Below are positions 313 through 26,211 of a stretch of 64,000 bases of DNA, in pieces (positions within the stretch are counted from its first letter, which is position 1; the number at the start of each line of letters is the position of its first letter). The position numbers and the translations under genes were made by a program. The stretch lies in IMG/VR virus record IMGVR_UViG_3300042923_000601, positions 124,001 through 188,000 of that record; one strand, 5' to 3'. Under the pieces are notes generated by a model. It was not told the origin of the DNA and made no database searches. It saw only the letters and a program-made list of their open reading frames with translations.

Positions 313-324
313 AACAACATGATA
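313..324 (+). promoter_or_regulatory. AR9-type late promoter AACA-N6-TA
   Basis: AACA ACATGA TA upstream of the giant fibre gene; the same motif precedes many structural genes in the window. Confidence 0.65.
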
Positions 325-369
325 AGTACATGTATCAAAATCATACTTACACGAAGGGGGATAAGCCCG

Positions 370-12300: not shown

Positions 12301-12330
12301 AGAATATCGTACACAATACAGGAGATGTAA
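370..12330 (+). CDS. Giant modular tail fibre / receptor-binding protein (~3990 aa)
   Basis: Likely start ATG 370 after GAAGGGGG (track start 319). Contains the fibre motifs DNPNVVTKAQVGLSNVDN and PTVPTAPDGTRNKQAASTEF, four ~730-aa cassettes each opening with NGRTLVNxLG and carrying carbohydrate-binding-like beta domains, and C-terminal knob-like repeats (DLNTVVTAGFY / DLNTLITTGYY). Confidence 0.85.
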   Translation: MSLPYVLSELGKLSNSLTNVIQQIETQLGNGTLTLDGLKSDIQAILNSAGQANGLAPLNGTATINKQYLPPIQELVKHGNEWHDKAYVTQTEIDTSVSAYAARRDNPNVVTKAQVGLSNVDNVKQEPYRNLGLNAKSATDLPNTYPVGISYMLADSTKGFPFTGVHNGVMTYNLSDGTTSTYQFAFNYENARVPRIRVRSATLGNTAWGDWAVMYTSAEPPTKADLGLGNVQNYPVATDAEAAAGVSNVTYMTPARTKTTVDAAVSSVSNTQVLGPGTNLVTAGKEGAELDLKVNGRTLVNILGTMGSGESVANWGISGTAPTISTTQKRSGTASFKFSTTDTSGVLVKDLAIPLDKSKYYMVTCWAYVESYTSGGATLNIREYNTSNVRYNVSVNTTKVGEWQQLLLKVPNNNTISTTEGFRIIAGVNTTGTMVVYYDELRLYEVSAAEYAAIGTTLATPEQIDAYFPYVDGKQHVQGVAITKQGKNLLLPLTQRGTNNGTVIDAYAFDHPALVAFGNGYMTYDVIPNTDYVFSAVPGATGQMGVYNDTATVALSDYANTPRAFNSGANTKVRIYFRNTVVGTVRFSDLQLEFGTVATPFAPAEPQTVVLPVTLGEVGGIKDSVSNAGTEWLYTERVRKNVVIDGSLTWAYNDSPGTGLRVVKTAMAGGSSAMPVRTVLYDGRVGGSHLPAGTNNRASATTDTFYIMVSNAEAGWTDTLTPSANAIKALMNGWEAVANNGTTYTSWTSILDGSVAPTNTEAWVAANKAPSWSAWCSLDYALGTAAIPVTISSAEGAISLHPGGNQVTVETGIIQREKIAPQLSTTYGRYYINEVGATVSAVDSPLKYKTNRILDVYAGGTKAKWISETNASNQNGTAIASILTADYDASKTYYATYIALDKYLMTPSVAEVNASWKSGLNGVVPELAQSVADLKSAMDYPVLYSPEMLGEPTVPTAPDGTRNKQAASTEFAAKVAESYANAKFIKEDHTQAISQGLSIINGGETGADVDFSINGRTLVNLLGNYGNFEVDSNNDGLGDGWIRQGGTLTLSTTGVAYGTKSQRITSTSSDTSITDRGMYRYVWLEASKYYVAIAHLTTDGTTIGMIRMEEGASGTNIDTSSSVNQTLFIKFSPVATKNFVFRVFNRAPVGSVGWIEIDGISIYEVDAATYARIGVDITASNIRTYLPYVDGKQHLQNIVISKQGLNLMPNAPESVSTVAKLDGPYAMTLVATAAGQSSFWDIPVKPGVTYTIRAELTGTVGIIARTLFKEDLSTNAAYATALTSTGTYTFTAFEGSAFVRVYFNSTAAGTSTLKNWMMVVGDATALPTTFVPSDIPQTVILPVTLGETSGVTDTVYNSGSEWLYVERIKKNVPLVGGLAWAFNTTFTGVKRLSLALSPAALSGFSSARVVRYDGLQFKNNETTASGNPNVSQISNNQLLLNLATADTGWVDALTPNTNAIKAFFNGWKATANNGTAYTTWASSIDGSAPATNTEAWVAENKAPGMTTWGTVDYVLASAEVPTAVSAAEGSITLHPGNNQISVNTGVIVREKVNPVFYVSGNYYVINNIATTQNLYLSMLKYRMADVVTLYEESTVFNRYIKRAHGNAYGTYQMEISPSNFDTTKDYYLTYIARDKPAFSGFVTDMTANWKTGITGTVTELVQAVAELRNGDDTKMYHNPHFTGEPTVPTAADGTRTKQAASTEFTGRAIDNFSASKLQRADNVQVLSQGTNIIDGGDTGGDLDLTVNGRTLVNLLGNYGSGESLSGWSLAGTTVPTISTTQKRSGTSSFKMATGATGGSYLFRDFNTSLQSTKQYVVAGWAFVESWSSVAAGPSITLYDVGTNTQKYQVLGDKAIIGSWQPLVLKVPTSNTLVGTGFRILIGHGSAGASVSYYSDIRLYEVTAAEYAAIGTTITGDAFDTAFPYVNGRQHVQGVAITKQGQNLLASKPPVLNARARMNGPYDMVLDATGGNDSSYFLIDVPANTTITLSLAHNGRVAIANAAGTVNLVGYSSSQLLTVNTGSNTTIGVHFSNYSAGTGTFTFKNWMLVIGDATALPSTFTPAEPQTAILPVTLSQIGDARDTVYKEGSDWMYNERIKKGVTLTGALPWTLGTSYTGYKYVTVQSSNFPGMYMDKTAANISTAPPLRVTKYNGEPVTHAVSFSSEGSDRFNYGTDVSKVDITVSSGDSGWGDSYSPSAAEIAAYFYGYRMNNGTFGTAYNGTGTKTWAVIGATNNTGAVTVVPTSQAPITALWSPYILDYTLSSAAAPSFIPNAEGDITLHPGKNQIAVETGIIQREKVTPSPYLTNYYINALSGDKLSLRPSRILQVYKGNNADSKWIQITRSTSEEPSYSVYGPAYAIIKSGDFDPTATYYVTYVVAQKHTRSANLSDVTTSWKSGINGVVAELTQAVADLRESIDYPVLYSPEILGEPTVPTAPDGTRNKQAASTEFAARVAENYTAATLDGVTNVQTLASGVSLITADKVGSDLDLIINGRTLVNILGTVGGGESLTGTIPAGVAPVISTTQKRSGLSSYKYVPTASSPSYFYKDYTVSLDKSKYYVLGAWFYTESTANTGMTEVSLRDAGSFTARYSIYGAQSVTGSWQWRFAKIPANNTLVGNGFRLLVGMGGGYAGVFYIDDIRLYEITAAEYNAIGTTIDGDAVDQYYPYVDGKKHTQGLAITKFGRNLLDGIPITLHANAKMNGLYDLTLTATATWSHSWLPTIPVVGGRKMTFSIDPLTVNGAYVYVFEYDSNGTQLSSVGAVANINFSSLTFTTNTQTVTIRVQLTNAIASGTFTFKNWKLEYGDKTPFEPAAPQNVIIPVTLGQIGDVTDTVYNAGSDWMYAERIKKDVVLDGSLTWGVYSTVTGFKNVQAAIPSLSGTGGADDAALAVRYDGIPLKNVDEAVASWTQPDYFRLYNGSVYMSIRSTDSGWTDALNPNVNAVKAFMNGWKAVGSNGTVYTSWVSILDASVPTTNTEAWVAANKAPGWTGWATLDYVMTSAPAPVPIRLSEGSISLHGGVNQIMVETGVIQREKAKPIYDNGFWNINAQVGSNNDSKLAYRTKRTLAIYKDANIDPSWIVGTRPSTSTLIPLFGNDGVQAPTAMYDPTATYYVTYLVLDQYAVTPSLTNISASWKTGLNGVVTSLAHDVAMLQADNDRQDFADKYLNDKVAVLQNLYPTTLTGDFAINANGKDLLQMVVAAGNGFKTLCANSTSTNIPSGVTFRGHSFGSVGSDGEWTGFVQLYSQLNTNFSNFRYGASGWGGWQKNINENMASGETRVNAISLGGYNVEKTKSYAIPNTLTNAKMDITWEPVLSSGTVEITVTCGFNTVNANGVIRKVISYGSNASGGINPYNSYYKEVLGPIKNYLGVSELVYDSTTANLKITVETLANGYVFGGTVTVKFLSSMGRAVPNITIGDPYSGASLGSVVPVQVIPDDTVTTSGYQIQKHPLTNNIGQNILLTANTDLNTVVTAGFYSGNGLTNAPTNEVTWWYVQVYVHSGSVGYVLQRAYHLSATGTPTEYIRRRVNNTWTTWVYVPNSSMLNVANGILQLDSSGLAPLAQLPAIQKWLLTSNTGSGKDGVATYDLNTLITTGYYSINTNSTNMPISGSSTMLLVMYFGSTYYQQEATVYATGPVVRKFVRETRNSGTTWTAWAEIETTAKKDVANGYAGLNASGVLLPSVMPATVTKRVNLYGQLQITSYRRSVVALCEVTNTEPGATSYTNGVLTFKRVNGLAGQTTIMVSAEKRWSSTAMNISVLKMGLTGAAIRPCTFTYNGVKYGGLEIYIEAAESQLVEFNGAGNFTPFGVDYYTVNTSTVVNAEINNSLGLVEGTDFYYINGIFMNDVSISPTTDSIANRPVLRDSNKKIAEVASTRSNGVNIALTATNTLTTAVSYTTSGVVANYVVYVTIWPSVATTLTIQLTYTSPMGGSQTTVILNAKQLAAGAESSLIPLYVTANAFSTMNLQYLSTTTNSTNPLRISYTIQEM

Positions 12331-12390: not shown

Positions 12391-13845
12391 ATGGGTCAAC
12401 TAATCGTGTCAGGCGACGCAACCGCAGCTGACGTCCTTATAGGGCATACTTTTAGTGCTGGGCCGTTAAACGGTGTAGCCGGTACAATGCCTGATAACGG
12501 AGCCGGAGGAACGGTAACTCCTTCTGCATCCACACAAACAAAGGCCGCAGGATATTATTCAAGCGCTATTACAATATCGGCTGTAACGTTCACCGCAGCA
12601 AATGTATTAACAGGAACAACAATCGCGGGTACGGCAGGTACGATGCCAAACCGTGGAGCAGTAACAATCACCCCGTCTTCCGCTGCTCAAACTATCGCCG
12701 CCGGATACCATAATGGGTCAGGTACAGTTGCCGCAGTTACCGTGCCTGCCGCTAACGTATTGACAGGAACAACAATTGCAGGTGTGGCAGGGACCATGGT
12801 GAATAATGGTGCAGGTGGAACCGTAACTCCTTCTGCATCTACACAAACCAAACCAGCCGGATATTATTCAAGTGCTATTACAATTTCGGCAGTATCGGTT
12901 CCTGCAGCCAACGTTTTAACAGGTACTACAATTGCAGGAACCGCAGGTACGATGCCTAACCGTGGAGCAGTAACAATCACCCCGTCTGCCTCCGCTCAAA
13001 CCATTGCTGCTGGGTACCATAATGGCTCAGGTAGTGTTGCTGCTGTAACATTTCCGACAGAGTATGTTCTAAATGGTGTTGTTATTGCAGGCACTGAAGG
13101 AACGATGGCGAGTTATGGTGACCAAGAGATGATAACCGCTGGTGGGACAATGGGCGAAGGTTATGTCACGCTATCCAGTTACGCAGAGGGGTATGTTAAT
13201 AGTGGAACCACATACTCTTTGCAGTCGGGCGTTATTTCAGCCTCTAAGATTCTAGCCGGGCAGAATATTCTCGGTTTAGGGGGAACTGCGACATCTGATG
13301 CGACTGCTGTGGCCGCTGACGTCTTATCTGGTAAGACAGTATATATTAACGGGGCAAAAATTATTGGGACGATGCCTAACATTACGTCTGGATCAGACCC
13401 AGCACAAGGCGTTGGTCTATGGGGGGATGGCGGCTTAGCAGTGTATCCATCACCAGGATATCGTAAGGGTGGTGCGGGTGCTGGTGAAATTAAAGTATCT
13501 GTGGCTCAGCTCCAAACAGTCGCAAGTATACAGCCGGGGAACATCCGTAGTGGGGTTACTTTATTTGGAGTGGTGGGTAATGTGGTACCACGCGTGTATT
13601 CATACTATTCCTTCAGTATGGACGCGGGCTCTAACGTAGTCGGATATAACGCGGGGTTTACACCAAGGGCGATTGCAGTTAGAGGTACAGTTGGACAAAC
13701 TGTAGTTGCCGCATCCTGGTTTTCGGACGGCAATGTGTATGGGTCATTTGCCCAATACATTGCCATTTCCACAGCTGGAAATAACATCACTTTTACTAGA
13801 CAAACCTCCGGGACTATCAATTTTGATGTATCGATATTTGGCTAA
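12391..13845 (+). CDS. Tail fibre / fibre-associated protein with A/G/T-rich repeats
   Basis: RBS AGGAGG; repeats AANVLTGTTIAGxAGTM and ATAxAADVLxGxT typical of Firmicute phage fibres; ~102-aa tandem duplication. Confidence 0.7.
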   Translation: MGQLIVSGDATAADVLIGHTFSAGPLNGVAGTMPDNGAGGTVTPSASTQTKAAGYYSSAITISAVTFTAANVLTGTTIAGTAGTMPNRGAVTITPSSAAQTIAAGYHNGSGTVAAVTVPAANVLTGTTIAGVAGTMVNNGAGGTVTPSASTQTKPAGYYSSAITISAVSVPAANVLTGTTIAGTAGTMPNRGAVTITPSASAQTIAAGYHNGSGSVAAVTFPTEYVLNGVVIAGTEGTMASYGDQEMITAGGTMGEGYVTLSSYAEGYVNSGTTYSLQSGVISASKILAGQNILGLGGTATSDATAVAADVLSGKTVYINGAKIIGTMPNITSGSDPAQGVGLWGDGGLAVYPSPGYRKGGAGAGEIKVSVAQLQTVASIQPGNIRSGVTLFGVVGNVVPRVYSYYSFSMDAGSNVVGYNAGFTPRAIAVRGTVGQTVVAASWFSDGNVYGSFAQYIAISTAGNNITFTRQTSGTINFDVSIFG

Positions 13846-13873
13846 AAACGCAACACTAGACCTGGTATTATCA

Positions 13874-13885
13874 AACAATCTAATA
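13874..13885 (+). promoter_or_regulatory. Late promoter AACA-N6-TA
   Basis: AACA ATCTAA TA upstream of the endolysin RBS. Confidence 0.65.
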
Positions 13886-13915
13886 ACCCAAGTAAAAAAG
13901 GAGTGGATAAATCAT

Positions 13916-14860
13916 ATGCAAACCAAAGGCAATTTCCTGCTGATGGAACTGTCTGAGTTTCAGGCGTGGTTGGAGAAGCAAGTAATCACCCGTGCTGTTT
14001 CTAAAGTTCAGTTCCATCACACCGCAAGTCCTAACTACACAACACGTAAGATGGTTAATGGTGTAGCGACCCAGGATCACTTTAAGTGTCTGGAAGGCAT
14101 GCGCGACTACCATATCATCACCAACGGATGGTCTGCAACCGGTCAAAACATCACCATCTTCGAAGACGGTAAAGTGGCAATCAGTCTTGACCGCGATTTG
14201 AACAAAACTCCTGCTGGTATCACTGGCCAGAACACCGGTCAAATCTGTATCGAAAACATCGGTAACTTCGACAAGGGTGGCGACACGATGACAGCTAAGC
14301 AACGCGAAGCTATCATCCATGTGTATGCTTGCTTGGCTAAGAAGTTTAACCTGCCGATCGATACTGACCATTTTGTATACCATGCATGGTTTACAGCTAG
14401 TGGCACAAGACTCGCTGACTATACCCCTGGTAAGTCCTCGAAGTCCTGCCCGGGCACCAACTTCTTCGGCGCAGGAAACACGGTTGCATCTGCTAAAACG
14501 GTCGTGTTCCCGCTGATTCAAGCTGAACTCAACAGATTGAACGCGCCTGTTACTCCGCCGCAGCCGGTTCCATCAACAGATATCCCGCAGGAAATCACAG
14601 TGTATTACAACACCGTGAAGGATACCGGGGTACTGTACAATAACAAAACGTATGTCAAGCTTACCAAGCTGGCTGAAGTACTTGGATTTGAAGCCGGTTA
14701 TGATAACGCCACGAAGAAAGCAACAATCAACGGTAAGGAACTGCAAGATACCCTTGTAGTTGACGGTCGTGCATTTATTCAGGCACGTCCAATCGTTGAT
14801 GCCTTCGGCGGTGAACTGAGCTGGAATAATGATACCAAGGTGCTCAAGGTCACTAAGTAA
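13916..14860 (+). CDS. Endolysin: N-acetylmuramoyl-L-alanine amidase (Amidase_2-like) with a C-terminal copper-amine-oxidase-N-like wall-binding domain
   Basis: Start ATG 13916 after AAGGAG (track start 13706 overlaps the upstream gene). Zn-ligand motifs FHHTA, YHAWF and KSCPG; Pro-rich linker; C-terminal TYVKLTKLAEVLGFEAGYDNATK...LSWNNDTKVLKV. Confidence 0.85.
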   Translation: MQTKGNFLLMELSEFQAWLEKQVITRAVSKVQFHHTASPNYTTRKMVNGVATQDHFKCLEGMRDYHIITNGWSATGQNITIFEDGKVAISLDRDLNKTPAGITGQNTGQICIENIGNFDKGGDTMTAKQREAIIHVYACLAKKFNLPIDTDHFVYHAWFTASGTRLADYTPGKSSKSCPGTNFFGAGNTVASAKTVVFPLIQAELNRLNAPVTPPQPVPSTDIPQEITVYYNTVKDTGVLYNNKTYVKLTKLAEVLGFEAGYDNATKKATINGKELQDTLVVDGRAFIQARPIVDAFGGELSWNNDTKVLKVTK

Positions 14861-16466: not shown

Positions 16467-16493
16467 GGAGAGACAGCTAAATGCTGTCTCTCC
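16467..16493. terminator. Bidirectional terminator
   Basis: GGAGAGACAGC / GCTGTCTCTCC between convergent genes. Confidence 0.8.
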
Positions 16494-16515: not shown

Positions 16516-16605
16516 TTACTTCTTCTTACCGTCGCCAGTGGTACCTACCGGAATACCAATAGTAGTGTGGTCGATATCACCGCGTTTTTGTCTGAGGTTG
16601 ATCAA
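16516..16605 (-). CDS. Small 29-aa peptide MINLRQKRGDIDHTTIGIPVGTTGDGKKK (not in the ORF track)
   Basis: TTG start preceded by a strong GAGGAGGTG RBS; TAA at 16516-16518; followed by the terminator. Confidence 0.6.
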   Translation of the reverse strand: MINLRQKRGDIDHTTIGIPVGTTGDGKKK

Positions 16606-16628
16606 TGTTGTCACCTCCTCCAATATAA

Positions 16629-16658
16629 AGTGAACCTAGATTTGTTGCTAGGTTCACT
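16629..16658 (-). terminator. Hairpin/terminator after the ppk operon
   Basis: AGTGAACCTAG / CTAGGTTCACT perfect 11-bp stem. Confidence 0.7.
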
Positions 16659-16688
16659 AATATGATATATACTTGGAACCCTATAAAA

Positions 16689-16910
16689 TTACGGCTTGAA
16701 CGGCGGTGTGATTTGAACACCAAGATCATGCGCCATCGTAAAAAGTTGGCGTGTTTCTGCCGTAAGATGCATCATTGCAATGGCAGCAAGCGAGACCTCG
16801 ATCTCATCCATTGACTGCACAATGATATCAGAATGGTGTTCGATCTGCTGGCTCAGATTGTTGACACGAGCCTGAATGTGCATTCGAGTTAGCTCTAATG
16901 CTTTATCCAT
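16689..16910 (-). CDS. Hypothetical protein (73 aa)
   Basis: GGGAG RBS; directly downstream of ppk. Confidence 0.6.
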   Translation of the reverse strand: MDKALELTRMHIQARVNNLSQQIEHHSDIIVQSMDEIEVSLAAIAMMHLTAETRQLFTMAHDLGVQITPPFKP

Positions 16911-16928
16911 CCGGTTTCTCCCCTTGTG

Positions 16929-19900
16929 TTATCTAATGAAATACTTGTGAGCATCCAGGGATGACGGTGCATCAGGTGCCGCACCATCTTCACCCCGAAC
17001 AAGGTTTAATTCACGGTAAGGAACATACCCTACAGCATAACTGATGAAACTATTCTCCGTATCATCCAGCAATACCTGAAGGTTTCCTTGTACCCGCAGT
17101 TTAAGGTTTGGATCAGATACCATGAACATCAACTCCAACCGGCGATCCAGATTACGGGTCATCAGGTCGGAAGAACTGAGGAATACATCATCCCCGAATT
17201 GGAATACCCGGCTGTGCTCAAGGAACCGGCCAACAATCGATTTTACTTTGATATTTTCGCTGTACCCTGGAATACCTGCAATCAGAGAGCAAGCTGACCG
17301 GCAAATGATATCGATATTAACACCGGCATTAGATGCTTGATACAGTTTTTCCGCCATACCAGGGTCAGACAGATTGTTCACCTTAATGATAATTCGGCCA
17401 TCAGACCCAAGCGCGATCTGCTGGTCAATCAAGGTGTATAAGGTTGACCGGATTGCAATTGGTGCAATCTTGATATTGTTAAGCTGACTATCTTCGGAGA
17501 TGAATCCGCCAGTCAGCATGTTAAAGATACTATTGATATCCGAGCAGACTTTCTTATCCGAAGTGAAGTAGCTGTAATCGGTATACACCTTGGAGTTCTT
17601 TTCACTGTAGTTACCAGTGCCGATATGACAGAACTGTTCACCTGTCTTTCCTTTGAGGCGGAATACATGAGTCATCTTGGCATGAGTCTTAATATGCTCA
17701 TAACCATAGACAACGGTTGCACCTGCCCGCTGGAGTTTATCTGCCCATTCAATATTGGTTCCTTCATCATACCGAGCTTTAAGTTCCATTACCACGGTCA
17801 CGTTCTTTCCAGCCTCAGCCGCTTTGATCAGGTGACGGATGATCTTAGAATCATTACCCGACCGGTACAGCGTCTGTTTGATGGAAATGACATGAGGGTC
17901 TTCGCATGCATCGCGGATGAATCGTACGACGCTATCAGTGAAGCTTTCATACGGATGATGTACCAGCACATCCCGTTTCGCAATCCGAGCCAGCATCGTT
18001 TTCTTATTATGCTCTTCATACAGTGGACGCGGCTTGAAGTGAGGGTACTTAAGTGCAGGGTCATCAGATGCTTTATACAGCTGAATGACATCCGACATTT
18101 TGATCCGTTCTTGAACGTGGAATACATACCGGCTTGGGATATCCAAGGACGACTGAAGTGCTGATTTGATTTTCTTATTCGCACCAGCCAAGATATCCAG
18201 TCGAACCGGATCGTTGTACAGCATACGGCTTTGGACATTCATAACCATTGTTTCCACATAACCTTTATCCTCATCCACAACCACAGTGTCACCATCGCGG
18301 ATCACACGGAAAATCGTGATATCAGAGCAGGTTGAACCCGGATAGAGATCAGTGATGTTAGCAAGGATGATGTCTTCGATGAAGTACCAACCGTGTTTAC
18401 CGATCTTAACAATCCGATCCAAGTGGGTTGGGATTTCGATCAGCCCCATACGTTCAGTACCGTCTGCTGTCTCTACAAAGAGTGCAATGTAGATAGAGAG
18501 TGGTTTAAGGTGCGGGATTGGACGAGTCACATCCAGAGCCAGTGGTGCAAGTGCAGGCTTGATAGTGTAATTGAAGTACTTCTTGACCTTGTTACGTTCA
18601 AAATCGGTCAGGATGTGAATGTCAGACTCAGCCAGCTTGTCAATTAAATGCCGATATGTGGAATCCATTCGTTCCACCATGGACTTGCATTCGCTGATAA
18701 TGTTATTAACGACCTGACGGTCTTCGACTTCATCTTCTTCCTCATCATCCAGTTCTTCATCGTCTTTGAGTCTGGATGCTACACGAACAGCGAAGAATTC
18801 ATCCAGATTAGAGTTCGCGATAGATAAGAACTTCACTCGTTCCAGGAGAGGTGTAGTGTCCTTATCTGCAAGGGACAATACCCGATTGTTGAAGCTTATC
18901 CAGGAAAGCTCCCGGTCAATGTAGGGCATTTCAGCCGTATTAATTCCAGTTGTCATTGTAGTACCTCCGTTTACTTTGTTGATTATATCATCAGTGTTAG
19001 CCATTAAATCAGGATGCTGGAAATCAAGGATCATGGCTTCAATATCAGCCAAACTTCTTTCTATACCATGCACATTCTTCAGTTTCTTCTGTATCTTTTC
19101 AGCAACCGTTGGTGTAGATTCTAACTTAAATCGGCCGAAGTGTGCAGGTGGCGTAGGATCAAGAATTTGAGTCATCCGTAGAATGATCTCCTTAATGTCA
19201 TGTAACTCCATTGATATATTACATATCGATTTCAGATCACGCTGAATCTCAACTGGTGTCTTGTATATGGGCCCAGCCTCATACTCTGCCTGAGACCGAA
19301 AAGTGTGCTCTTCGTTATCTTGCAGTATTGTTATGATCGCATCAAACTGCTGGGGTATACCTATTGGCAGGGTTTGTGCCGTTCTTAGAACAGACATCGC
19401 ATGCTTTACCGGTATATTAGGTTTGTTGAATAACATAGGCGCAATTCGAATATCTTCTTTATTGACAATAATTCTGTCATTAATCTTCGCACCTAGCTTA
19501 TCTTTGTCGAAGTTCAACCTTACAGGTTCGGCGTTAATCGTCTTAACTAGCCGGTCGTATTGCTGGATAGTGGATGTGATCAGTTTAATACCCACGTCCA
19601 CACCATAATCAGACTTCAGTATGCCATCAATCTCGTCTGGCGTCAGGTGCACAGCATCTTCTCCACGCTCAGCCCATTGTATATAAGCCTGAGAATTTTG
19701 AAGTAATGCTATGATAGCCTTGAATATTTTTGAAATACTGAGTGATGACCACGGTATCGAGGTCAACGTATGCCTAGCTTCATCCGCCGTCAGCTGATTA
19801 TCAAAGAAGGCAGGTGCAATTCTAATGCCTTCGTCATCAATAATGATTCTTTTAAAGCGAACCTTCGGCGCATCCGCGCTATGGCTTCCGCCACGTCCAG

Positions 19901-20051
19901 GTTCATTGTCAGTTCTGGTTTCACTCCCTTCATCGTCAAGCTGTGTATTTTCATTGTTGTTACTGGTCTCAACGTCAGAAAGCATTTCGCCAGAACGAGT
20001 TCCCCCGTCATTCATTCCATTTCCACTCGCACTGCCGTTCGTTTCGTTCAT
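16929..20051 (-). CDS. ppk1: Polyphosphate kinase 1 with a ~365-aa N-terminal extension
   Basis: Motifs DRELSWISFNNRVL, SNLDEFFAVRV, DVLVHHPYESF, IKQTLYR, ELKARYDE, KTHAK (phospho-His), HIGTGNY, SIVGRFLEHSRV and MTRNLDRRLE. RBS GGAGG at the 5' start; a second GGAGG precedes the in-frame ATG at 18956. Confidence 0.93.
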   Translation of the reverse strand: MNETNGSASGNGMNDGGTRSGEMLSDVETSNNNENTQLDDEGSETRTDNEPGRGGSHSADAPKVRFKRIIIDDEGIRIAPAFFDNQLTADEARHTLTSIPWSSLSISKIFKAIIALLQNSQAYIQWAERGEDAVHLTPDEIDGILKSDYGVDVGIKLITSTIQQYDRLVKTINAEPVRLNFDKDKLGAKINDRIIVNKEDIRIAPMLFNKPNIPVKHAMSVLRTAQTLPIGIPQQFDAIITILQDNEEHTFRSQAEYEAGPIYKTPVEIQRDLKSICNISMELHDIKEIILRMTQILDPTPPAHFGRFKLESTPTVAEKIQKKLKNVHGIERSLADIEAMILDFQHPDLMANTDDIINKVNGGTTMTTGINTAEMPYIDRELSWISFNNRVLSLADKDTTPLLERVKFLSIANSNLDEFFAVRVASRLKDDEELDDEEEDEVEDRQVVNNIISECKSMVERMDSTYRHLIDKLAESDIHILTDFERNKVKKYFNYTIKPALAPLALDVTRPIPHLKPLSIYIALFVETADGTERMGLIEIPTHLDRIVKIGKHGWYFIEDIILANITDLYPGSTCSDITIFRVIRDGDTVVVDEDKGYVETMVMNVQSRMLYNDPVRLDILAGANKKIKSALQSSLDIPSRYVFHVQERIKMSDVIQLYKASDDPALKYPHFKPRPLYEEHNKKTMLARIAKRDVLVHHPYESFTDSVVRFIRDACEDPHVISIKQTLYRSGNDSKIIRHLIKAAEAGKNVTVVMELKARYDEGTNIEWADKLQRAGATVVYGYEHIKTHAKMTHVFRLKGKTGEQFCHIGTGNYSEKNSKVYTDYSYFTSDKKVCSDINSIFNMLTGGFISEDSQLNNIKIAPIAIRSTLYTLIDQQIALGSDGRIIIKVNNLSDPGMAEKLYQASNAGVNIDIICRSACSLIAGIPGYSENIKVKSIVGRFLEHSRVFQFGDDVFLSSSDLMTRNLDRRLELMFMVSDPNLKLRVQGNLQVLLDDTENSFISYAVGYVPYRELNLVRGEDGAAPDAPSSLDAHKYFIR

Positions 20052-20092
20052 AACTTAAATTCCTCCAGTATAGTTAGGATGTGATACACTTG

Positions 20093-20105
20093 TATAATAT
20101 ATACC
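20093..20105 (-). promoter_or_regulatory. Early-type AT-rich promoter (GGTATATATTATA)
   Basis: Recurrent motif upstream of non-structural genes; resembles the phiKZ early promoter TATATTAC. Confidence 0.6.
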
Positions 20106-20144
20106 TGAAATCAATAATATTTGCACGTTATGCTATGTGTAAGA

Positions 20145-20156
20145 AACAATAGGATA
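20145..20156 (+). promoter_or_regulatory. Late promoter AACA-N6-TA
   Basis: AACA ATAGGA TA upstream of 20172. Confidence 0.6.
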
Positions 20157-20171
20157 ATCTAAGATAAAGGA

Positions 20172-20555
20172 GTGAAAGCCATGCTGACACCATCTGAATT
20201 TTTGATCATCGTCGCTGTGGTAGCTGGTGCAATTGCAGTTACCGGTCGCTGGGTATATTACAAAAGAACGGGGAAAGAACTGGTTGAGGGTGATAGCAAC
20301 CTGATTCTGAATCTCCGCAACACAGTGGTATCGACTCTCCTCGAAGGTATTCACCTGAAGGAAATCGAAACCGAGCAAGGTCGAGATGCTGTCCGGGATG
20401 AAATCGCAGCTAAGGCTAAGCAAATCCTCGCTGAAACCACAGCTTTGACGGAAGGTGAAAAGGAGCTTGTATCCAAGCTCGACTTCACATTATTCATTGC
20501 ACTGGTTGAGAAGGAACTTATTAGTCGCGGTGTACTCGAACCTGAGAAATCATAA
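20172..20555 (+). CDS. N-terminally anchored membrane protein, possibly holin-like (LL-H-type architecture)
   Basis: Single N-terminal TM FLIIVAVVAGAIAV followed by a charged helical domain; late-type promoter. Confidence 0.5.
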   Translation: MKAMLTPSEFLIIVAVVAGAIAVTGRWVYYKRTGKELVEGDSNLILNLRNTVVSTLLEGIHLKEIETEQGRDAVRDEIAAKAKQILAETTALTEGEKELVSKLDFTLFIALVEKELISRGVLEPEKS

Positions 20556-20561
20556 GAAGAA

Positions 20562-20587
20562 CGGACATGGAGATTCCTCCATGTCCG
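20562..20587. terminator. Bidirectional terminator
   Basis: CGGACATGGAG / CTCCATGTCCG between convergent genes. Confidence 0.8.
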
Positions 20588-21937: not shown

Positions 21938-23455
21938 TTACGAAGCATTTTCACCCAGAGCGTAGAGTTCAGACAGGATCAAGATGTAGTCCTTAATGAA
22001 CTTCATGCGCTCAGAATAGTTACCATGCGTACGAGACACATAGTTGTATTTCGGGCTGAGGGTTGGTTCGAAGGTCTTGATCAATCTCCAGTCCTTCATT
22101 GGGAAGTAGTACAAGCTGTCCCCGTCATGGTCTCCCGCATATCCGTCAAGCAGAGATGGTGAGATACGCATACACAGGTCGTCAATGTCATTACCAACAG
22201 CCACGACTTGCAGTAGACGAATGGAACGGTCAGATAGAGTAGGTGGACGACCAACCATTACACAAATCGGCGTCTTGGACTCTTTCAAGATCGTCATCAT
22301 CAGTGCATAGATACGTGGATTGTAAATCCGCAGGCTATCGTTGATGATCTTGTAAGCTTCATTCTCCGTAATATCATCCAAGATACACAAGAGGTGAATC
22401 AACTCAAGTTCAAGGAATACGATACCTGTAATGTACGGGATTTGAACATCGCATGGTCTAAGATGTACACCTGGGATGATGATGCTTCGGGCCGCGTAGT
22501 CAATACGAACGCCACCGAAGTTCGATCGGAACATCCCTTCTTTACCGGAATACGTATCAACCAGCCATGCATACAGGTCATTCAGTTTCTGCTGAATACC
22601 ATGCAGTGCGGGCACGATGGTCAGCTCGTTATCCGGCTCCGTTACGATCAGGTTGTATTGAGACATGATCATACCATAGAGCTTGTTCGGTTTAAAGGCA
22701 CGAACCTTTTCATTATTCTCGATATGCGGGCGAATGATCGCGCTGTATACCGGGATATAGTTAGTAAAGATCGATTCCTTGTCCCTAACCAGGAGCTCGT
22801 AATGATCACGCTTCTTATTGGCTGTATCAAGACCCATATAGAAATCAAGGATTTCGTCAATGTGCTTATACAGATACATCATGCCTACATTATGGTATCG
22901 TTTACGCGGCTCAACATCATCTCTGAGATTCCCATCGACTGACCATCTGGCGGTGCTCATCTTGAGGATGTTCTCAAGTTCGCCTTTACCAAACAAGATG
23001 TTCATATGGGTATACATAGCTGGGTTGATAACCACATACTGCTGCAGGGGAATCCAGCCCATGATGCTAAGGTCAGCATCCATGAATTTAACTGGTGTTC
23101 CGCACACTGGGCAAATCTCATCAATGGAAATTGCACCGCCTGTTTCACCGCACTGACACCGGTAAGCATCTTGCCGTCCGGTTTGGTTGTCGAATTGGGT
23201 GTAACCATAACGAGGTGAGAAGATACCGTCCACGGTTTTATTGCCAGCTTTATCAATGGCTTCAGGGTTTGTCACAAGGAAGTCTTTCCCGGACTTAAGA
23301 CCCTTCTCCGCCTCTTTACGGAGATTTACTTTAATCAACTGCTCAGATTCGATGGACTGATCATAGTCCTCAAAGTAGCGTTTAACCTCGGGTAATTGGA
23401 ATTGCTTGACGTCACCATAGTCGATGACGTCTCCGTTTAACATAACTTCTTGCAT
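21938..23455 (-). CDS. Phage RNA polymerase beta'-like subunit, N-terminal half (Zn finger, clamp, catalytic DPBB)
   Basis: Start ATG 23455 after GGAGG. Motifs DGIFSPRYG, CQCG..CPVC, GKEGMFRSNFGGVRIDYAARSII, GRPPTL and catalytic loop YAGDHDGD. Confidence 0.9.
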   Translation of the reverse strand: MQEVMLNGDVIDYGDVKQFQLPEVKRYFEDYDQSIESEQLIKVNLRKEAEKGLKSGKDFLVTNPEAIDKAGNKTVDGIFSPRYGYTQFDNQTGRQDAYRCQCGETGGAISIDEICPVCGTPVKFMDADLSIMGWIPLQQYVVINPAMYTHMNILFGKGELENILKMSTARWSVDGNLRDDVEPRKRYHNVGMMYLYKHIDEILDFYMGLDTANKKRDHYELLVRDKESIFTNYIPVYSAIIRPHIENNEKVRAFKPNKLYGMIMSQYNLIVTEPDNELTIVPALHGIQQKLNDLYAWLVDTYSGKEGMFRSNFGGVRIDYAARSIIIPGVHLRPCDVQIPYITGIVFLELELIHLLCILDDITENEAYKIINDSLRIYNPRIYALMMTILKESKTPICVMVGRPPTLSDRSIRLLQVVAVGNDIDDLCMRISPSLLDGYAGDHDGDSLYYFPMKDWRLIKTFEPTLSPKYNYVSRTHGNYSERMKFIKDYILILSELYALGENAS

Positions 23456-23469
23456 ATTGTGTCTGCCTC

Positions 23470-24048
23470 CTATTGCTTTTTGTGTATACTGCGTCCTACT
23501 TCTTTGTATAAAAGATCGCAAAATACCTTCATATGAGTTTTGCGGAATTCGACCGGTAAATTTGGCACTCCCACTAATTCATATGGGAATGCATACTTGC
23601 CGATGTGTTTATACGGGATGATTTCGTTAGACATGTGCTTGAGAAATATGGTTCGTCTACCTTCATGAATATCTTTCCGAGTAAGTTCGGTGAATTCAGA
23701 TAAGTATCGCCACTCATGATAGATTTTCTCCGGCGCGTAGGTTGTCATTTCAACCGCCGTGTTAACAAAGATTAAAATCGTTTCGATCAGGATCATTTCC
23801 AGCAACTGACCGAACTTTGCTCTTTCTACAGCGCCGTAATTTGCCTTGATGGCAGCCACGATAGCGTTTGGTGATATCGTAACTTCTCTTACAACGGTTC
23901 TTGCACGGCCGGTAAACTTAAACCGGACCAGTTCACCAGTGGGTATATTCCCAATGATAACGTTCGTTGCTAATTTCAGGCTGTTATCTCCCCTACAGAC
24001 CTGAATCATTTCGTTGAGCCGCCTCTTGACTCTCCGTTTACTGAACAT
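23470..24048 (-). CDS. Hypothetical protein (192 aa) co-transcribed with beta'-N
   Basis: GGGAGGG RBS; early-type promoter upstream. Confidence 0.65.
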   Translation of the reverse strand: MFSKRRVKRRLNEMIQVCRGDNSLKLATNVIIGNIPTGELVRFKFTGRARTVVREVTISPNAIVAAIKANYGAVERAKFGQLLEMILIETILIFVNTAVEMTTYAPEKIYHEWRYLSEFTELTRKDIHEGRRTIFLKHMSNEIIPYKHIGKYAFPYELVGVPNLPVEFRKTHMKVFCDLLYKEVGRSIHKKQ

Positions 24049-24169: not shown

Positions 24170-25369
24170 TTATTTACCGATAAGGTCATCCACCGTCACG
24201 CGGTAAGTATAAACCTTTTTGTTATGGAACGCCTTAAGCCGCTTATTCATCATCGTCGATCCAATCTTGGACGACGCTATACCAACGGCTTTAAGTTTAA
24301 GTCTATACGATTGTGAACCCAGACATGCATTACAGATATGCGGTTTAGGCTGGTGGCAGAACATTGGTGATCTAAACTTCATCCGTCTTCCCTCATACTG
24401 CTTGAAGTTTTCAGGGGTCAGTTCCACCAACTTCTTACCATCAATCATATTCATGTACATGAGTTCGTTCTTAAAGAATGGGTCTACAACCATGTGGATG
24501 TACCCATCAGTACCGCAGTCTGAACCCTTTGGTCCAGATGCAACGTCTTGCAGGGTTGCAATAAACTTCTGAGCTGCATAACCACCCATCGCAACCCCTT
24601 TAGCGCGCTGGAATGTACCATATACAGCTGAGTCAGCAAGCAAGTGATACTCTTCTTTGGATATCCCGTCATCGTAGTTTGAGGTAGCGATCTTCCAATC
24701 GCCTGTCCCTGTATCAACGATCGGACCCTTCATGAGCATCATGGTCTTGAAGTTATTATCGAAATTGAGCTTCGCGTCAGAAGCAAAGTTATCCCACTCT
24801 GGGAGTTTCTCCAAATGCTTCTTCGCCATATCAACCAGCTCTTTTTCAATCTTCGCGCCGACGATAACATCACCCTCGGCGATTTCCTTCGCGTATTTCT
24901 TAAAGAGCATTGCGCGGTGTTCCTTGACCTCTTTCGGGATGGTAAAGAGTCTAGGCGAGAGTGATACATTGATCAATTCTGCCAAATCACCACCACCAAG
25001 CCAGTCAAGAGAGTCAATTAACTCAAAGAACTGCGCAGACACAATCTTGTCTTCAAACAGGGCTTGGGAGATTAACGTGTAAATTTTCTTTAGCACGCCG
25101 CCTGTAATCGGGGTGTTTACATAACCAACCACATCCGAGAAATGTTTATCGATAACCAAGCGGTTAAAGATGTACAATCCGATTGTGGTCAGACCCTTTA
25201 TATTTTTGCAGCATGCATTCTCCGGTAAGAAGAACCAATCTGTTGTGGTGAACCTTGGTGTTGGGTTATTGCGTGTCCGGCCAAAGTAACTCTTCAGCAG
25301 CGTGGTTGTGATGTCGTCTTGTGTTAACTTAATGACTTCCTGTATTTCTTCGGGAGTCAGTGATCTCAT
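24170..25369 (-). CDS. Phage RNA polymerase beta'-like subunit, C-terminal/middle part (bridge helix to trigger loop)
   Basis: Bridge-helix-like AKGVAMGGYAAQKF, QD...SDCGT, RSPMFC, Zn motif ICNACLG, and trigger-loop-like KIGSTMMNKRLKAFH. Confidence 0.88.
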   Translation of the reverse strand: MRSLTPEEIQEVIKLTQDDITTTLLKSYFGRTRNNPTPRFTTTDWFFLPENACCKNIKGLTTIGLYIFNRLVIDKHFSDVVGYVNTPITGGVLKKIYTLISQALFEDKIVSAQFFELIDSLDWLGGGDLAELINVSLSPRLFTIPKEVKEHRAMLFKKYAKEIAEGDVIVGAKIEKELVDMAKKHLEKLPEWDNFASDAKLNFDNNFKTMMLMKGPIVDTGTGDWKIATSNYDDGISKEEYHLLADSAVYGTFQRAKGVAMGGYAAQKFIATLQDVASGPKGSDCGTDGYIHMVVDPFFKNELMYMNMIDGKKLVELTPENFKQYEGRRMKFRSPMFCHQPKPHICNACLGSQSYRLKLKAVGIASSKIGSTMMNKRLKAFHNKKVYTYRVTVDDLIGK

Positions 25370-25383
25370 AGTATAACCTCCCT

Positions 25384-26211
25384 TTAGATGATGTACACCT
25401 TATACGAGAAGGTGAAGAATGATTCAGCATCCCGCAAGAACATGTTTGGAATGTTAAGCTTGGTCACCGCACGCACACCTGCAAAGTCGGTTCCATCAAG
25501 GAAGCCAGCGATCAGGGTGATACTGTTGAATCGGCAGTTTGCGATGTTACCATACGTTGCCACGTACCACTCACGTACATCTTGCGGTGAAATCGTGAAT
25601 ACGACTTCTGCGAACGCAAGAATGCCAAGTGTAGTGTCCACACTGTCAATGTTCGGAGGAACTTCAGTTCCATCGGTGAACAGGTGACGAACGACCGGGT
25701 CTACGTCAAAGCGTTTACCGTAATAATAGAACTTAGAACCAACCTGTTTCTTCATGGCGTACTTGGCCTGGTCGGCTGTAGACAAGTCAGCGGTAGTGTC
25801 AACCACACGAATCGGGATCATACCGGATACGGATTTGTCTTTGAACTTAACAGCGCGGATCAAGTCAGGTGTTTCTACACCGGCATTACCGATCATGATG
25901 CCAAAGATCGTCTCATTTTTGAGGTTATCTTGGTTCGGCGTGATCGTATGTTTGATCTGCAGGTCTTGGGATAGCGTGGTCTGTCCAAATGACGACCGAC
26001 GTTTAAACATTTGCTCCAAGATGTACGTGGAACCCGGGAGAATGATATCATTGAATCGAAACATCTTTCTCCCAGTGATCCCATTCGTGATTTCAAGCAC
26101 ACCAACTACCTTTGTTTTGTCCAGCCCTCCGACGAGCAAACGCCCATCGGAAAGCATAAGTTCATCACGAACGCCTACCTTATCTGTTAAACTATCCGGA
26201 AATATATTCAT
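25384..26211 (-). CDS. Probable baseplate/tail structural protein (275 aa)
   Basis: In the late operon with the 756-aa protein; beta-rich; GGAGG RBS. Confidence 0.55.
   Translation of the reverse strand: MNIFPDSLTDKVGVRDELMLSDGRLLVGGLDKTKVVGVLEITNGITGRKMFRFNDIILPGSTYILEQMFKRRSSFGQTTLSQDLQIKHTITPNQDNLKNETIFGIMIGNAGVETPDLIRAVKFKDKSVSGMIPIRVVDTTADLSTADQAKYAMKKQVGSKFYYYGKRFDVDPVVRHLFTDGTEVPPNIDSVDTTLGILAFAEVVFTISPQDVREWYVATYGNIANCRFNSITLIAGFLDGTDFAGVRAVTKLNIPNMFLRDAESFFTFSYKVYII

What the first reader, a model, noticed from the sequence alone, without database searches (positions are those of the whole stretch)
16929..18956. Intact phage-encoded polyphosphate kinase 1 under an early-type promoter
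All PPK1 hallmark motifs, including the autophosphorylated His (KTHAK), are present. PPK1 is normally a cellular enzyme. A phage copy behind the TATATTATA motif implies active polyP synthesis early in infection, for example phosphate/energy storage, stress or stringent-response hijack, Lon modulation or condensate formation.
Basis: partly seen in the sequence, partly recalled or inferred. Interest (0 to 1): 0.65.

Follow-up and report, generated by a model that had tools for sequence, protein, structure and literature searches.

The report
Jumbo-phage polyphosphate kinase with orphan N-terminal extension
An uncultured 247-kb soil phage related to Bacillus phage AR9 carries an intact polyphosphate kinase gene behind a virion-polymerase-type early promoter; the gene is conserved at the same position across a lineage of giant phages, and in this phage it has gained a 365-residue N-terminal extension with no detectable relatives.

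Summary
The PPK1 call is correct, but the gene model was too short. The open frame runs 16929-20051 (minus strand, 1040 aa), not 16929-18956. Residues 377-1002 are a complete four-domain PPK1 (TIGR03705 676 bits, cutoff 466) with every catalytic residue checked conserved (H790/H809/H946 = E. coli H435/H454/H592).

The TATATTATA motif lies 42 nt upstream of the long ORF. It matches the mapped AR9 virion-RNAP early promoter (TATATATTAT-N6-G) and predicts a start site at 20087.

The window belongs to a 246.7-kb viral record with split multisubunit RNAP genes, so the contig is not chimeric. The same neighbours and motif flank ppk1 in at least 11 other 200-258-kb viral contigs. These PPK1s form two viral-only clades on a long stem, nearest to Bacillota, and no cellular genome exceeds about 40% identity. 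Cultured Vibrio phages acquired PPK1 independently.

Residues 1-365 are an orphan: an acidic head plus two diverged 125-aa repeats, with no relative among 1.84 billion proteins. They score as coding, recur in an independent soil sample and vary in silage relatives. An SD-ATG at M366 suggests a second, canonical-length isoform.

PolyP synthesis and its role in infection are untested.

The parts
16929..20051 (-). Full ppk1 ORF, 1040 aa (P0001): orphan extension plus complete PPK1
   Evidence: ORF list and translation. Pfam and NCBIfam matches. Coding score positive along the whole length.
20087..20103 (-). AR9-type virion-RNAP early promoter TATATATTAT-N6-G; predicted transcription start at G 20087, giving a 35-nt 5' UTR
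   Evidence: Sequence. AR9 consensus from PMC5312081. Genome-wide over-representation and placement. The same motif lies upstream of ppk1 in relatives. The start site is inferred, not mapped.
20062..20066 (-). GGAGG Shine-Dalgarno, 10 nt before the ATG at 20051
   Evidence: Sequence.
19869..20051 (-). Residues 1-61: acidic, Asn/Gly/Ser-rich low-complexity head of the extension
   Evidence: Translation. No secondary structure in the model.
19494..19868 (-). Repeat A of the extension (residues 62-186)
   Evidence: Internal duplication: BLASTP E=3e-9 and 29% identity over about 125 aa. AF2 model with pLDDT 79.7: a beta-hairpin plus a helical bundle.
19116..19493 (-). Repeat B of the extension (residues 187-312)
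   Evidence: There is no DNA-level tandem repeat, so the duplication is old.
18954..18968 (-).
   Evidence: Only 4 of 1,468 internal in-frame ATGs in the genome have such a Shine-Dalgarno. Relatives without an extension begin near this position.
18609..18923 (-). PP_kinase_N domain (residues 377-481)
   Evidence: PF13089, 3.5e-30.
18078..18599 (-). PP_kinase middle (head) domain (residues 485-658)
   Evidence: PF02503, 8e-34.
17508..17996 (-). PP_kinase C1 domain (residues 686-848), containing KTHAK with H790 (codon 17682-17684) and H809
   Evidence: PF17941, 3e-65. Alignment to 1XDO.
17046..17468 (-). PP_kinase C2 domain (residues 862-1002), containing H946, R918, R971 and E973
   Evidence: PF13090, 2.9e-49. 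Alignments.
20562..20587 (.). Bidirectional terminator hairpin separating ppk1 and the small divergent gene from the upstream RNAP gene cluster
   Evidence: Terminator scan.
16629..16658 (-). First terminator-like hairpin downstream of ppk1 (after a 73-aa ORF at 16689-16910); a second lies at 16467-16493
   Evidence: Terminator scan. This is a consensus match only.
20172..20555 (+). Divergently transcribed small gene (about 125 aa, hydrophobic N-terminus by eye) that is a conserved neighbour of ppk1
   Evidence: Homologues sit in the same position in L002, L003, L005 and L086-L088. No Pfam match.

Best explanation
This is a genuine, catalytically competent PPK1 gene. It is a long-standing resident of an uncultured lineage of AR9-like jumbo phages, which encode their own multisubunit RNA polymerases and probably infect soil and silage Bacillota.

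It forms its own transcription unit. The promoter matches the type that the injected virion RNA polymerase reads in AR9, so the gene is most likely expressed within minutes of infection (inferred). The enzyme should autophosphorylate on His790 and transfer the gamma-phosphate of ATP processively onto a growing polyphosphate chain (inferred from conserved residues).

My preferred physiological reading is weakly held. The phage banks host ATP-derived phosphate and energy as polyP early on, then draws on it through PPK1's reverse and nucleoside-diphosphate-kinase reactions when a 247-kb genome must be replicated many times.

In this phage alone, a 365-residue orphan extension was added upstream of the ancestral start. 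It has an acidic head and two diverged 125-aa repeats. The old Shine-Dalgarno and ATG survive at M366, so both a 1040-aa and a 675-aa form may be made.
For: Identity:
- All four PPK1 domains are present, and TIGR03705 scores 676 bits against a 466-bit cutoff.
- The match to E. coli PPK 1XDO scores 321.8 bits.
- H790, H809 and H946 align to E. coli H435, H454 and H592. N415, R730, S735, R760, Y823, D825, R918, R971 and E973 are invariant in alignment A1.

Phage residence:
- The record is 246.7 kb and rated 100% complete.
- Split RNAP subunit genes, virion genes, tail genes and an endolysin gene flank ppk1.
- GC content is uniform across the region.
- The gene order 756-aa virion protein, 275-aa gene, RNAP beta, RNAP527, p420, small divergent gene, ppk1 recurs in other contigs.
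- An independent soil study tiles the locus at about 97-99% identity, including the extension/core junction and the promoter.

Selection: 25 of 33 listed strain differences in the core fall on third codon positions (p = 7.5e-7).

Lineage:
- A clade of 16 has SH-aLRT 100 on a stem of 1.06 substitutions per site, with a second viral clade of 9 as its sister (support 94).
- The best cellular PPK1 among 185,579 species genomes reaches only about 40% identity.

Promoter:
- It matches the AR9 early consensus exactly at TATATATTAT-N6-G.
- There are 32 copies in the genome, mostly 30-50 nt before a start codon.
- The motif is conserved upstream of ppk1 in both viral clades.

Extension:
- It scores as coding and contains an internal duplication.
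- The Shine-Dalgarno plus ATG at M366 is a 0.27% event by chance.
Against: - No enzyme assay and no transcript data exist, because no RNA run holds the locus. Early timing therefore rests on promoter similarity to a phage only about 32-34% identical in its RNAP subunit.
- The upstream AAA of the AR9 consensus reads AGG here.
- The storage role is conjecture. The genome has no PPX, PPK2, PhoH or RelA/SpoT that would mark a polyP-use pathway.
- The long stem of the viral clade could hide a change in kinetics or substrate preference.
- The Bacillota host assignment is indirect. It rests on the nearest cultured phages, on the endolysin domains Amidase_2 + Cu_amine_oxidN1 here and SLH in a relative, and on tree position.
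Confidence: 0.8

Rival explanations
1. PolyP acts as a takeover or anti-defence polymer rather than a store. The early-made polyanion would mimic a nucleic-acid backbone and so inhibit or mislocalise host DNA/RNA-binding enzymes such as nucleases, host RNA polymerase and the RNA degradosome. Alternatively, it could reprogramme host stress or sporulation physiology, or ATP could simply be drained to starve ATP-dependent defences.
For: - Expression from a virion-RNAP-type early promoter puts the gene in the class where AR9 host-takeover genes sit.
- There is no phage polyP-consuming partner.
- The N-terminus varies between relatives, and the repeat region differs between strains that share about 92% identity in the core. 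That pattern is seen in proteins engaged with variable host targets.
- From established knowledge: polyP inhibits degradosome RNA decay in vitro, alters RNA polymerase behaviour, and PPK is needed for normal sporulation in Bacillus cereus.
Against: There is no direct evidence. The variable N-terminus may only reflect low constraint. PPK1 is reversible, so a store needs no separate consuming enzyme.
Confidence: 0.3
2. The enzyme runs mainly in reverse during infection. It would mobilise the host's pre-existing polyP granules into ATP and GTP (polyP + NDP -> NTP) to fuel early transcription and replication.
For: - PPK1 is reversible and has NDP-kinase activity (established knowledge).
- Early expression.
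- There is no phage PPX that would waste the polymer as free phosphate.
- The habitats are soil and silage, where polyP-storing Bacillota are common (own knowledge).
Against: Cellular PPK1 kinetics favour synthesis when ATP/ADP is high (own knowledge). Nothing in the sequence distinguishes the direction of the reaction.
Confidence: 0.2
3. One reading: only a canonical 675-aa PPK1 starting at 18956 is made, and the upstream 1.1 kb is untranslated or non-functional.
For: A strong GGAGG-N7-ATG lies exactly at the canonical N-terminus. Relatives manage with N-terminal extensions of only about 0-130 residues. The extension has no homologue anywhere.
Against: - 365 codons stay open in frame, with a coding-type codon score and poor off-frame scores.
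- The duplication is conserved at the protein level but not at the DNA level.
- Repeat A folds with pLDDT about 80.
- The promoter and Shine-Dalgarno sit in front of the long ORF.
- The extension is retained at about 98-99% identity in an independent soil sample.
- A 1.1-kb non-coding gap would be odd in a genome that is about 93% coding.
Confidence: 0.08
4. The contig is chimeric, or the ppk1 segment is contaminating host DNA.
For: PPK1 is overwhelmingly a cellular gene, and no PHROG family covers it.
Against: - The gene lies mid-genome (140.9-144.1 kb of 246.7 kb) between phage genes.
- It has a phage-specific promoter.
- The same synteny is found in at least 11 other 200-258-kb viral contigs from different samples.
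- A single 239-kb Logan contig spans the locus, and an independent study tiles it.
- No cellular genome has a close copy.
Confidence: 0.02

Closest known systems
Bacterial PPK1 (E. coli Ppk, PDB 1XDO/1XDP; TIGR03705)
   Same: It has the same four-domain architecture. All catalytic and nucleotide-binding residues that I checked are conserved, and it scores above the equivalog cutoff.
   Different: - It is phage-encoded.
- It is at most about 40% identical to any cellular PPK1 and sits on a long viral-only branch.
- It carries a 365-aa orphan N-terminal extension.
- It is driven by a phage RNAP promoter rather than a sigma-70 type. Sigma-70-like sites are not enriched: 14 found against 11.4 expected.
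Polyphosphate kinases of cultured Vibrio phages vB_VcorM_GR7B and vB_VcorM_GR11A (MT366760, MT366761)
   Same: These are annotated PPK1 genes in large (195-208 kb) cultured phages, so they are a precedent for a phage-borne PPK1.
   Different: - They are only 33-35% identical.
- They have canonical length (667-672 aa).
- They branch with Gammaproteobacteria, which indicates an independent acquisition.
- They lack the RNAP/p420 neighbours and the TATATTAT motif.
- I found no paper on them in the library.
Viral ppk1/ppk2 'auxiliary metabolic genes' in metagenomic surveys (e.g. PMC13188868)
   Same: These are reports that viral contigs carry ppk1, interpreted as viral boosting of polyP accumulation.
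   Different: They are survey-level listings. The papers I read describe no defined phage lineage, synteny, promoter, phylogeny or domain architecture. No paper in the library pairs 'polyphosphate kinase' with 'jumbo phage'.
Bacillus jumbo phages AR9 / PBS1 / vB_BpuM-BpSp
   Same: These are the nearest cultured relatives by RNAP subunit, at 32-34% identity. They have the same split multisubunit RNAP system, and the early promoter consensus is the same.
   Different: They have no PPK1 (tblastn against 50,697 phage records). The ppk1-bearing lineage is known only from metagenomes.

Membership tests
Polyphosphate kinase 1 (PPK1, TIGR03705 / Pfam PP_kinase_N + PP_kinase + PP_kinase_C_1 + PP_kinase_C) | All four domains present, in the canonical order | tested here: met
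   PF13089 at 377-481, PF02503 at 485-658, PF17941 at 686-848 and PF13090 at 862-1002, all far above their cutoffs.
Polyphosphate kinase 1 (PPK1, TIGR03705 / Pfam PP_kinase_N + PP_kinase + PP_kinase_C_1 + PP_kinase_C) | Score above the curated equivalog cutoff | tested here: met
   TIGR03705 scores 676.1 bits against a cutoff of 465.85. The lineage-specific 'RNA degradosome PPK' models all fall below their own cutoffs, which fits a divergent branch.
Polyphosphate kinase 1 (PPK1, TIGR03705 / Pfam PP_kinase_N + PP_kinase + PP_kinase_C_1 + PP_kinase_C) | Autophosphorylated histidine (E. coli H435) plus H454 and H592 | tested here: met
   H790 (within KTHAK), H809 (within HIGTGN) and H946 (within LEHSR) align to these residues in 1XDO. 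H790 and H946 are invariant in A1, and H809 is at least 90% conserved.
Polyphosphate kinase 1 (PPK1, TIGR03705 / Pfam PP_kinase_N + PP_kinase + PP_kinase_C_1 + PP_kinase_C) | ATP/Mg-binding residues (E. coli N45, R375, S380, R405, Y468, D470, R564, R621, E623; list recalled from the structural and mutational literature) | tested here: met
   The aligned residues N415, R730, S735, R760, Y823, D825, R918, R971 and E973 are all invariant columns of A1.
Polyphosphate kinase 1 (PPK1, TIGR03705 / Pfam PP_kinase_N + PP_kinase + PP_kinase_C_1 + PP_kinase_C) | ATP-dependent polyP synthesis activity | not testable with these tools
   This needs a purified enzyme or complementation of a ppk mutant.
AR9/phiKZ-type virion-RNAP early promoter | Sequence match to AAATATATATTAT-(6N)-G+1 | tested here: met
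   The window reads aggTATATATTAT-ACAAGT-G. That is 10 of 13 consensus bases, with the G at the correct spacing.
AR9/phiKZ-type virion-RNAP early promoter | The motif is over-represented, intergenic and co-oriented with downstream genes | tested here: met
   There are 8 copies in the window against 0.73 expected. There are 32 in the genome, about 27 of them intergenic and most 30-50 nt from a start codon, with an extended TATATTATA-N3-RTG pattern.
AR9/phiKZ-type virion-RNAP early promoter | The phage encodes split multisubunit RNAP subunits | tested here: met
   phrog_2987, phrog_2962 and phrog_3148 RNAP beta-type subunits lie at 21938-23521, 24170-25369 and 44847-49130.
AR9/phiKZ-type virion-RNAP early promoter | Mapped 5' end and early, translation-independent transcription | not testable with these tools
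   No RNA run holds the locus, and there is no cultured host.

The most novel reading that the evidence does not exclude
The orphan, duplicated, strain-variable N-terminal module may be a targeting device. The weak fold hits are mostly helix-turn-helix-like, at Z <= 5.2, which is within noise. The module would tether the kinase to DNA, to the replication factory or to a host protein. PolyP would then be laid down locally in the first minutes of infection as an enzymatically made polyanion. It would serve as a backbone mimic that blocks host nucleic-acid-binding defences, or as a condensate scaffold. That would make PPK1 a conserved takeover or anti-defence enzyme of a whole jumbo-phage lineage rather than a metabolic helper.
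Probability: 0.1. Interest if true: 0.85.

Novelty: new variant of a known kind. Interest (0 to 1): 0.5.

Why it matters
PolyP is a universal but poorly understood polymer, and its role in phage infection is essentially unstudied. Three results matter here.

- ppk1 is not a stray 'auxiliary' gene. It is a syntenic, promoter-conserved gene under purifying selection across a deep, uncultured lineage of giant phages that run their own transcription.
- That turns a vague survey observation ('viruses carry ppk') into a defined, testable system with a predicted start site, two predicted isoforms and clear mutants to make.
- The orphan extension is a small example of domain accretion on a captured host enzyme. 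The phylogeny also shows that large phages acquired PPK1 at least twice, independently.

Tried and rejected
- **Single-protein scans of IMG/VR.** The core and the extension each found nothing. Only the alignment-based scan worked.
- **Extension, sequence searches.** There was no Pfam hit even at E <= 1 and no PHROG hit. PDB by sequence gave only a chance Fab match at E = 1.5. The word search found nothing else, nor did the exhaustive phmmer search over 1.84 billion proteins or the ESM Atlas feature search. There is no paralogue in the phage genome and no similarity to the N-terminus of the nearest relative.
- **Extension, structure.** Single-sequence AF2 of residues 1-376 was unusable (pLDDT 34). 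Repeat A folded with repeat B as its only alignment partner gave pLDDT 79.7. No fold search was significant: Foldseek PDB best E = 0.6, BFVD best E = 0.5, VIA-align best Z = 5.2 and Atlas TM <= 0.41. The many HTH or winged-helix rows are tied at noise level, so they are a lead, not evidence.
- **DNA-level tandem repeat in the gene.** None found.
- **Sigma-70-type promoters near the gene.** Not enriched.
- **Intron or intein in the L087 ppk1.** Rejected. It is a full gene plus an upstream partial duplicate.
- **Chimeric contig.** Rejected (see rival explanations).
- **Other polyP or phosphate genes in the genome.** PPK2, PPX/GppA, PhoH and RelA/SpoT are all absent.
- **Literature.** Nothing on the GR7B/GR11A phages, and nothing pairing 'jumbo phage' with 'polyphosphate kinase'.
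- **Not done.** Complex prediction was not used, because no binding claim is made.
Full report
**1. What is at the coordinates**

The minus-strand reading frame that ends at 16929 does not start at 18956. It stays open up to an ATG at 20051, giving 1040 residues.

Residues 377-1002 hold the four PPK1 domains in order: PP_kinase_N, the middle domain, C1 and C2, with E-values from 3.5e-30 to 3e-65. The protein scores 676 bits against the PPK1 equivalog TIGR03705, whose cutoff is 466. The best solved relative is E. coli PPK (1XDO/1XDP, 321.8 bits).

In that alignment KTHAK lies at 788-792. H790, H809 and H946 fall on E. coli H435, H454 and H592. The residues aligned to E. coli N45, R375, S380, R405, Y468, D470, R564, R621 and E623 are invariant in a 17-sequence alignment. 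I recalled the E. coli residue list from the structural and mutational literature; I computed the alignment here. No PHROG family matches the protein.

**2. The genomic setting is a jumbo phage**

The window is bases 124001-188000 of a 246,689-bp IMG/VR virus record that CheckV rates 100% complete. GC content is even across the region.

Genes around ppk1:
- Higher coordinates: two split RNAP beta-type subunits (21938-23521 and 24170-25369), a virion structural protein (26192-28462) and a 1427-aa RNAP subunit (44847-49130).
- Lower coordinates: an Amidase_2 + Cu_amine_oxidN1 endolysin (13706-14860) and a 4003-aa tail-type protein (319-12330).

The nearest cultured phages by RNAP subunit are Bacillus phages vB_BpuM-BpSp, AR9 and PBS1, at 32-34% identity. 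Listeria and Staphylococcus jumbo phages come next. None of these carries PPK1.

**3. The promoter**

TATATTATA occurs 8 times in the window against 0.73 expected, and 32 times in the genome. Nearly all copies are intergenic, co-oriented with the next gene and 30-50 nt before its start. The extended pattern is TATATTATA-N3-RTG.

The AR9 early promoters were mapped by dRNA-seq and primer extension, and they stay active under chloramphenicol. Their consensus is AAATATATATTAT-(6N)-G+1, and they are attributed to the injected virion RNAP (PMC5312081).

Upstream of the long ORF the window reads TATATATTAT-ACAAGT-G. That predicts a start at 20087 and a 35-nt leader, with GGAGG at 20062-20066 and the ATG at 20051.

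A bidirectional terminator at 20562-20587 insulates the unit from the RNAP cluster. Terminator-like hairpins follow at 16629-16658 and 16467-16493. Sigma-70-like sites are not enriched.

Early timing is an inference from promoter homology.

**4. Relatives and phylogeny**

The word search shows a sharp gap. Fourteen proteins share 50-67% identity (703-986 bits), and after that come cellular PPK1s at 42% or less (471 bits or less).

Where I read the contigs (52.6, 215.6 and 257.7 kb), the neighbours are the same as in the window. The order is a virion protein of about 750 aa, a gene of about 273 aa, RNAP beta (399 aa), an RNAP subunit of about 510 aa, a gene of about 420 aa, a small divergent gene, then ppk1.

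An alignment-based scan of IMG/VR added four more close members. It also found a second group at 34-37% identity on contigs of 38-250 kb. That second group also has the RNAP527 and p420 homologues upstream, at 22-30% identity, and TATATTAT in front of ppk1. Counting the window, at least 11 contigs of 200 kb or more carry the syntenic gene.

A scan of 185,579 species-representative genomes found no cellular PPK1 above about 40% identity. The best hits are scattered over many phyla.

I built an IQ-TREE tree with 109 rows and the LG+G4 model, using the quick search, so support is SH-aLRT only and the root is at the midpoint. It shows:
- The window protein pairs with P0002 (support 99).
- The close clade of 16 has support 100 on a stem of 1.06 substitutions per site.
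- The second viral clade is its sister (support 94).
- A split with support 99 groups both viral clades, one long-branch viral row and the five Bacillota sequences against everything else.
- The two cultured Vibrio phage PPK1s (667-672 aa) sit with a gammaproteobacterial sequence (support 100), so they are an independent acquisition.

A Bacillota donor is suggested but not established. The tree is unrooted, the cellular sampling was the 80 best hits, and I ran no AU test.

**5. Population evidence**

Contigs of four public runs were laid on 16600-20400.
- **X1, soil.** This is probably the source sample. A 239-kb contig spans the stretch without a difference.
- **X2, soil, independent study.** It tiles nearly all of the stretch at about 97-99% identity. 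One contig crosses the extension/core junction (18802-19013) and one crosses the ORF start and promoter (19650-20400).
- **X3 and X4, silage.** These hold relatives at about 92% identity. They match the core and the 5' end, but run off into unlike sequence at 19109 and 19801, which brackets the two repeats.

Of the 33 listed differences inside the core, 25 fall on third codon positions (p = 7.5e-7). That indicates purifying selection. Only the best-supported 40 of 220 differences were listed.

**6. The extension**

Residues 1-365 score as coding in frame: 0.14 bits per codon. The genome's long ORFs give 0.25 +/- 0.10, and the off-frames give -0.86 and -1.38. GC3 is lower than in the core, 0.41 against 0.49.

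The layout is an acidic low-complexity head (1-61), repeat A (62-186), repeat B (187-312) and a linker. The repeats match at E = 3e-9 and 29% identity over about 125 aa. They have no DNA-level repeat, so the duplication is old.

Nothing else resembles the extension. Sequence and family searches found no relative. There is also no paralogue in the genome and no match to the nearest relative's own 130-aa N-terminus. Relatives carry 0-130 residues of unrelated N-terminal sequence.

Repeat A folded with repeat B as its only alignment partner gives a beta-hairpin plus helical bundle (pLDDT 79.7, pTM 0.73). No library gives a significant match. The many helix-turn-helix-like rows at Z 3-5 are within the tool's stated noise.

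The ATG at 18956 (M366) has GGAGG 7 nt upstream. Only 4 of 1,468 internal in-frame ATGs in this genome have that, and canonical relatives begin near this point. I read it as the retained ancestral start, which may yield a second, 675-aa product.

**7. Mechanism**

Shown:
- The gene is an intact PPK1.
- It is phage-resident.
- It is syntenic and under purifying selection across a viral lineage.
- It sits behind an AR9-type early promoter motif.

Inferred:
- It is transcribed by virion RNAP within minutes of infection.
- It autophosphorylates on H790 and synthesises polyP from ATP.

Conjecture: the role of the polymer. The genome encodes no PPK2, PPX/GppA, PhoH or RelA/SpoT. Any use of the polymer therefore runs through PPK1's own reverse reaction or through host enzymes.
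- I favour a phosphate and energy buffer for replicating a very large genome.
- A takeover or anti-defence role for the polyanion is nearly as likely.
- Mobilising host polyP stores is a third possibility.

**8. Novelty**

Viral ppk1 appears in metagenomic surveys (PMC13188868) and is annotated in two cultured Vibrio phages. A phage PPK1 is therefore not new in itself.

I did not find the following in the searched library:
- a defined jumbo-phage lineage in which ppk1 is a conserved, syntenic, early-promoter gene;
- evidence for independent acquisitions by large phages;
- the orphan-extended architecture seen here.

I rate it a new variant of a known kind, of moderate interest.

Noticed in passing
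window 50303-60685 (+): A 3460-aa ORF carries Peptidase_C39_2 (residues 2686-2837), SLT transglycosylase (2920-3021) and VanY carboxypeptidase (3175-3241) domains. It looks like a giant, probably virion-borne, protein with three different cell-wall-degrading activities.
   Followed up: partly
window 319-12330 (+): A 4003-aa ORF has no Pfam hit. It matches phrog_13022 at 1066 bits in four stretches and the tail-protein family phrog_6613 in three stretches, so it is internally repetitive.
   Followed up: partly
window 19110-19800 (-), the repeat region of the ppk1 extension: Silage-metagenome relatives are about 92% identical in the PPK core and at the 5' end. They run into unlike sequence exactly across the two repeats, with loose ends at 19109 and 19801. 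The extension is therefore strain-variable or replaced there. The contig sequences themselves could not be retrieved.
   Followed up: partly
L087 8001-8279 and 9248-11248 (IMGVR_UViG_3300025530_000275); L100 8016-10168 (IMGVR_UViG_3300025010_000081): In one relative, a partial duplicate of ppk1 (core residues 123-207) lies about 1 kb upstream of the full gene. In another, ppk1 is frameshifted near 9765-9773 and a 37-residue N-terminal duplicate lies upstream. The 5' side of ppk1 seems prone to rearrangement.
   Followed up: partly
G000 record ends (outside the window): last ~100 nt versus positions ~76-176: The last 100 bases of the 246,689-bp record recur at positions 77-176 near its start, but the first 50 bases do not recur at the end. 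This is a near-terminal direct repeat rather than a clean terminal overlap.
   Followed up: no
window 13706-14860 (+); L003 16173-16997: The endolysin is Amidase_2 with a Cu_amine_oxidN1 domain. A relative's lysin is Amidase_3 + SLH. Both wall-binding modules point to Bacillota hosts, which fits the soil and silage habitats.
   Followed up: partly
L005 6100-6864 and 15933-20438 (JGI 3300076269 contig, 257,735 bp): This ppk1-bearing relative also encodes an Anti-Pycsar Apyc1-type metallo-beta-lactamase-fold protein and two radical-SAM proteins close to ppk1.
   Followed up: no
window 16689-16910 (-): A 73-aa ORF lies between the ppk1 stop and the first downstream terminator, so it is probably co-transcribed. 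Strain differences there show a 3-nt periodicity, which suggests it is coding. It has only faint coiled-coil-type Pfam hits.
   Followed up: no
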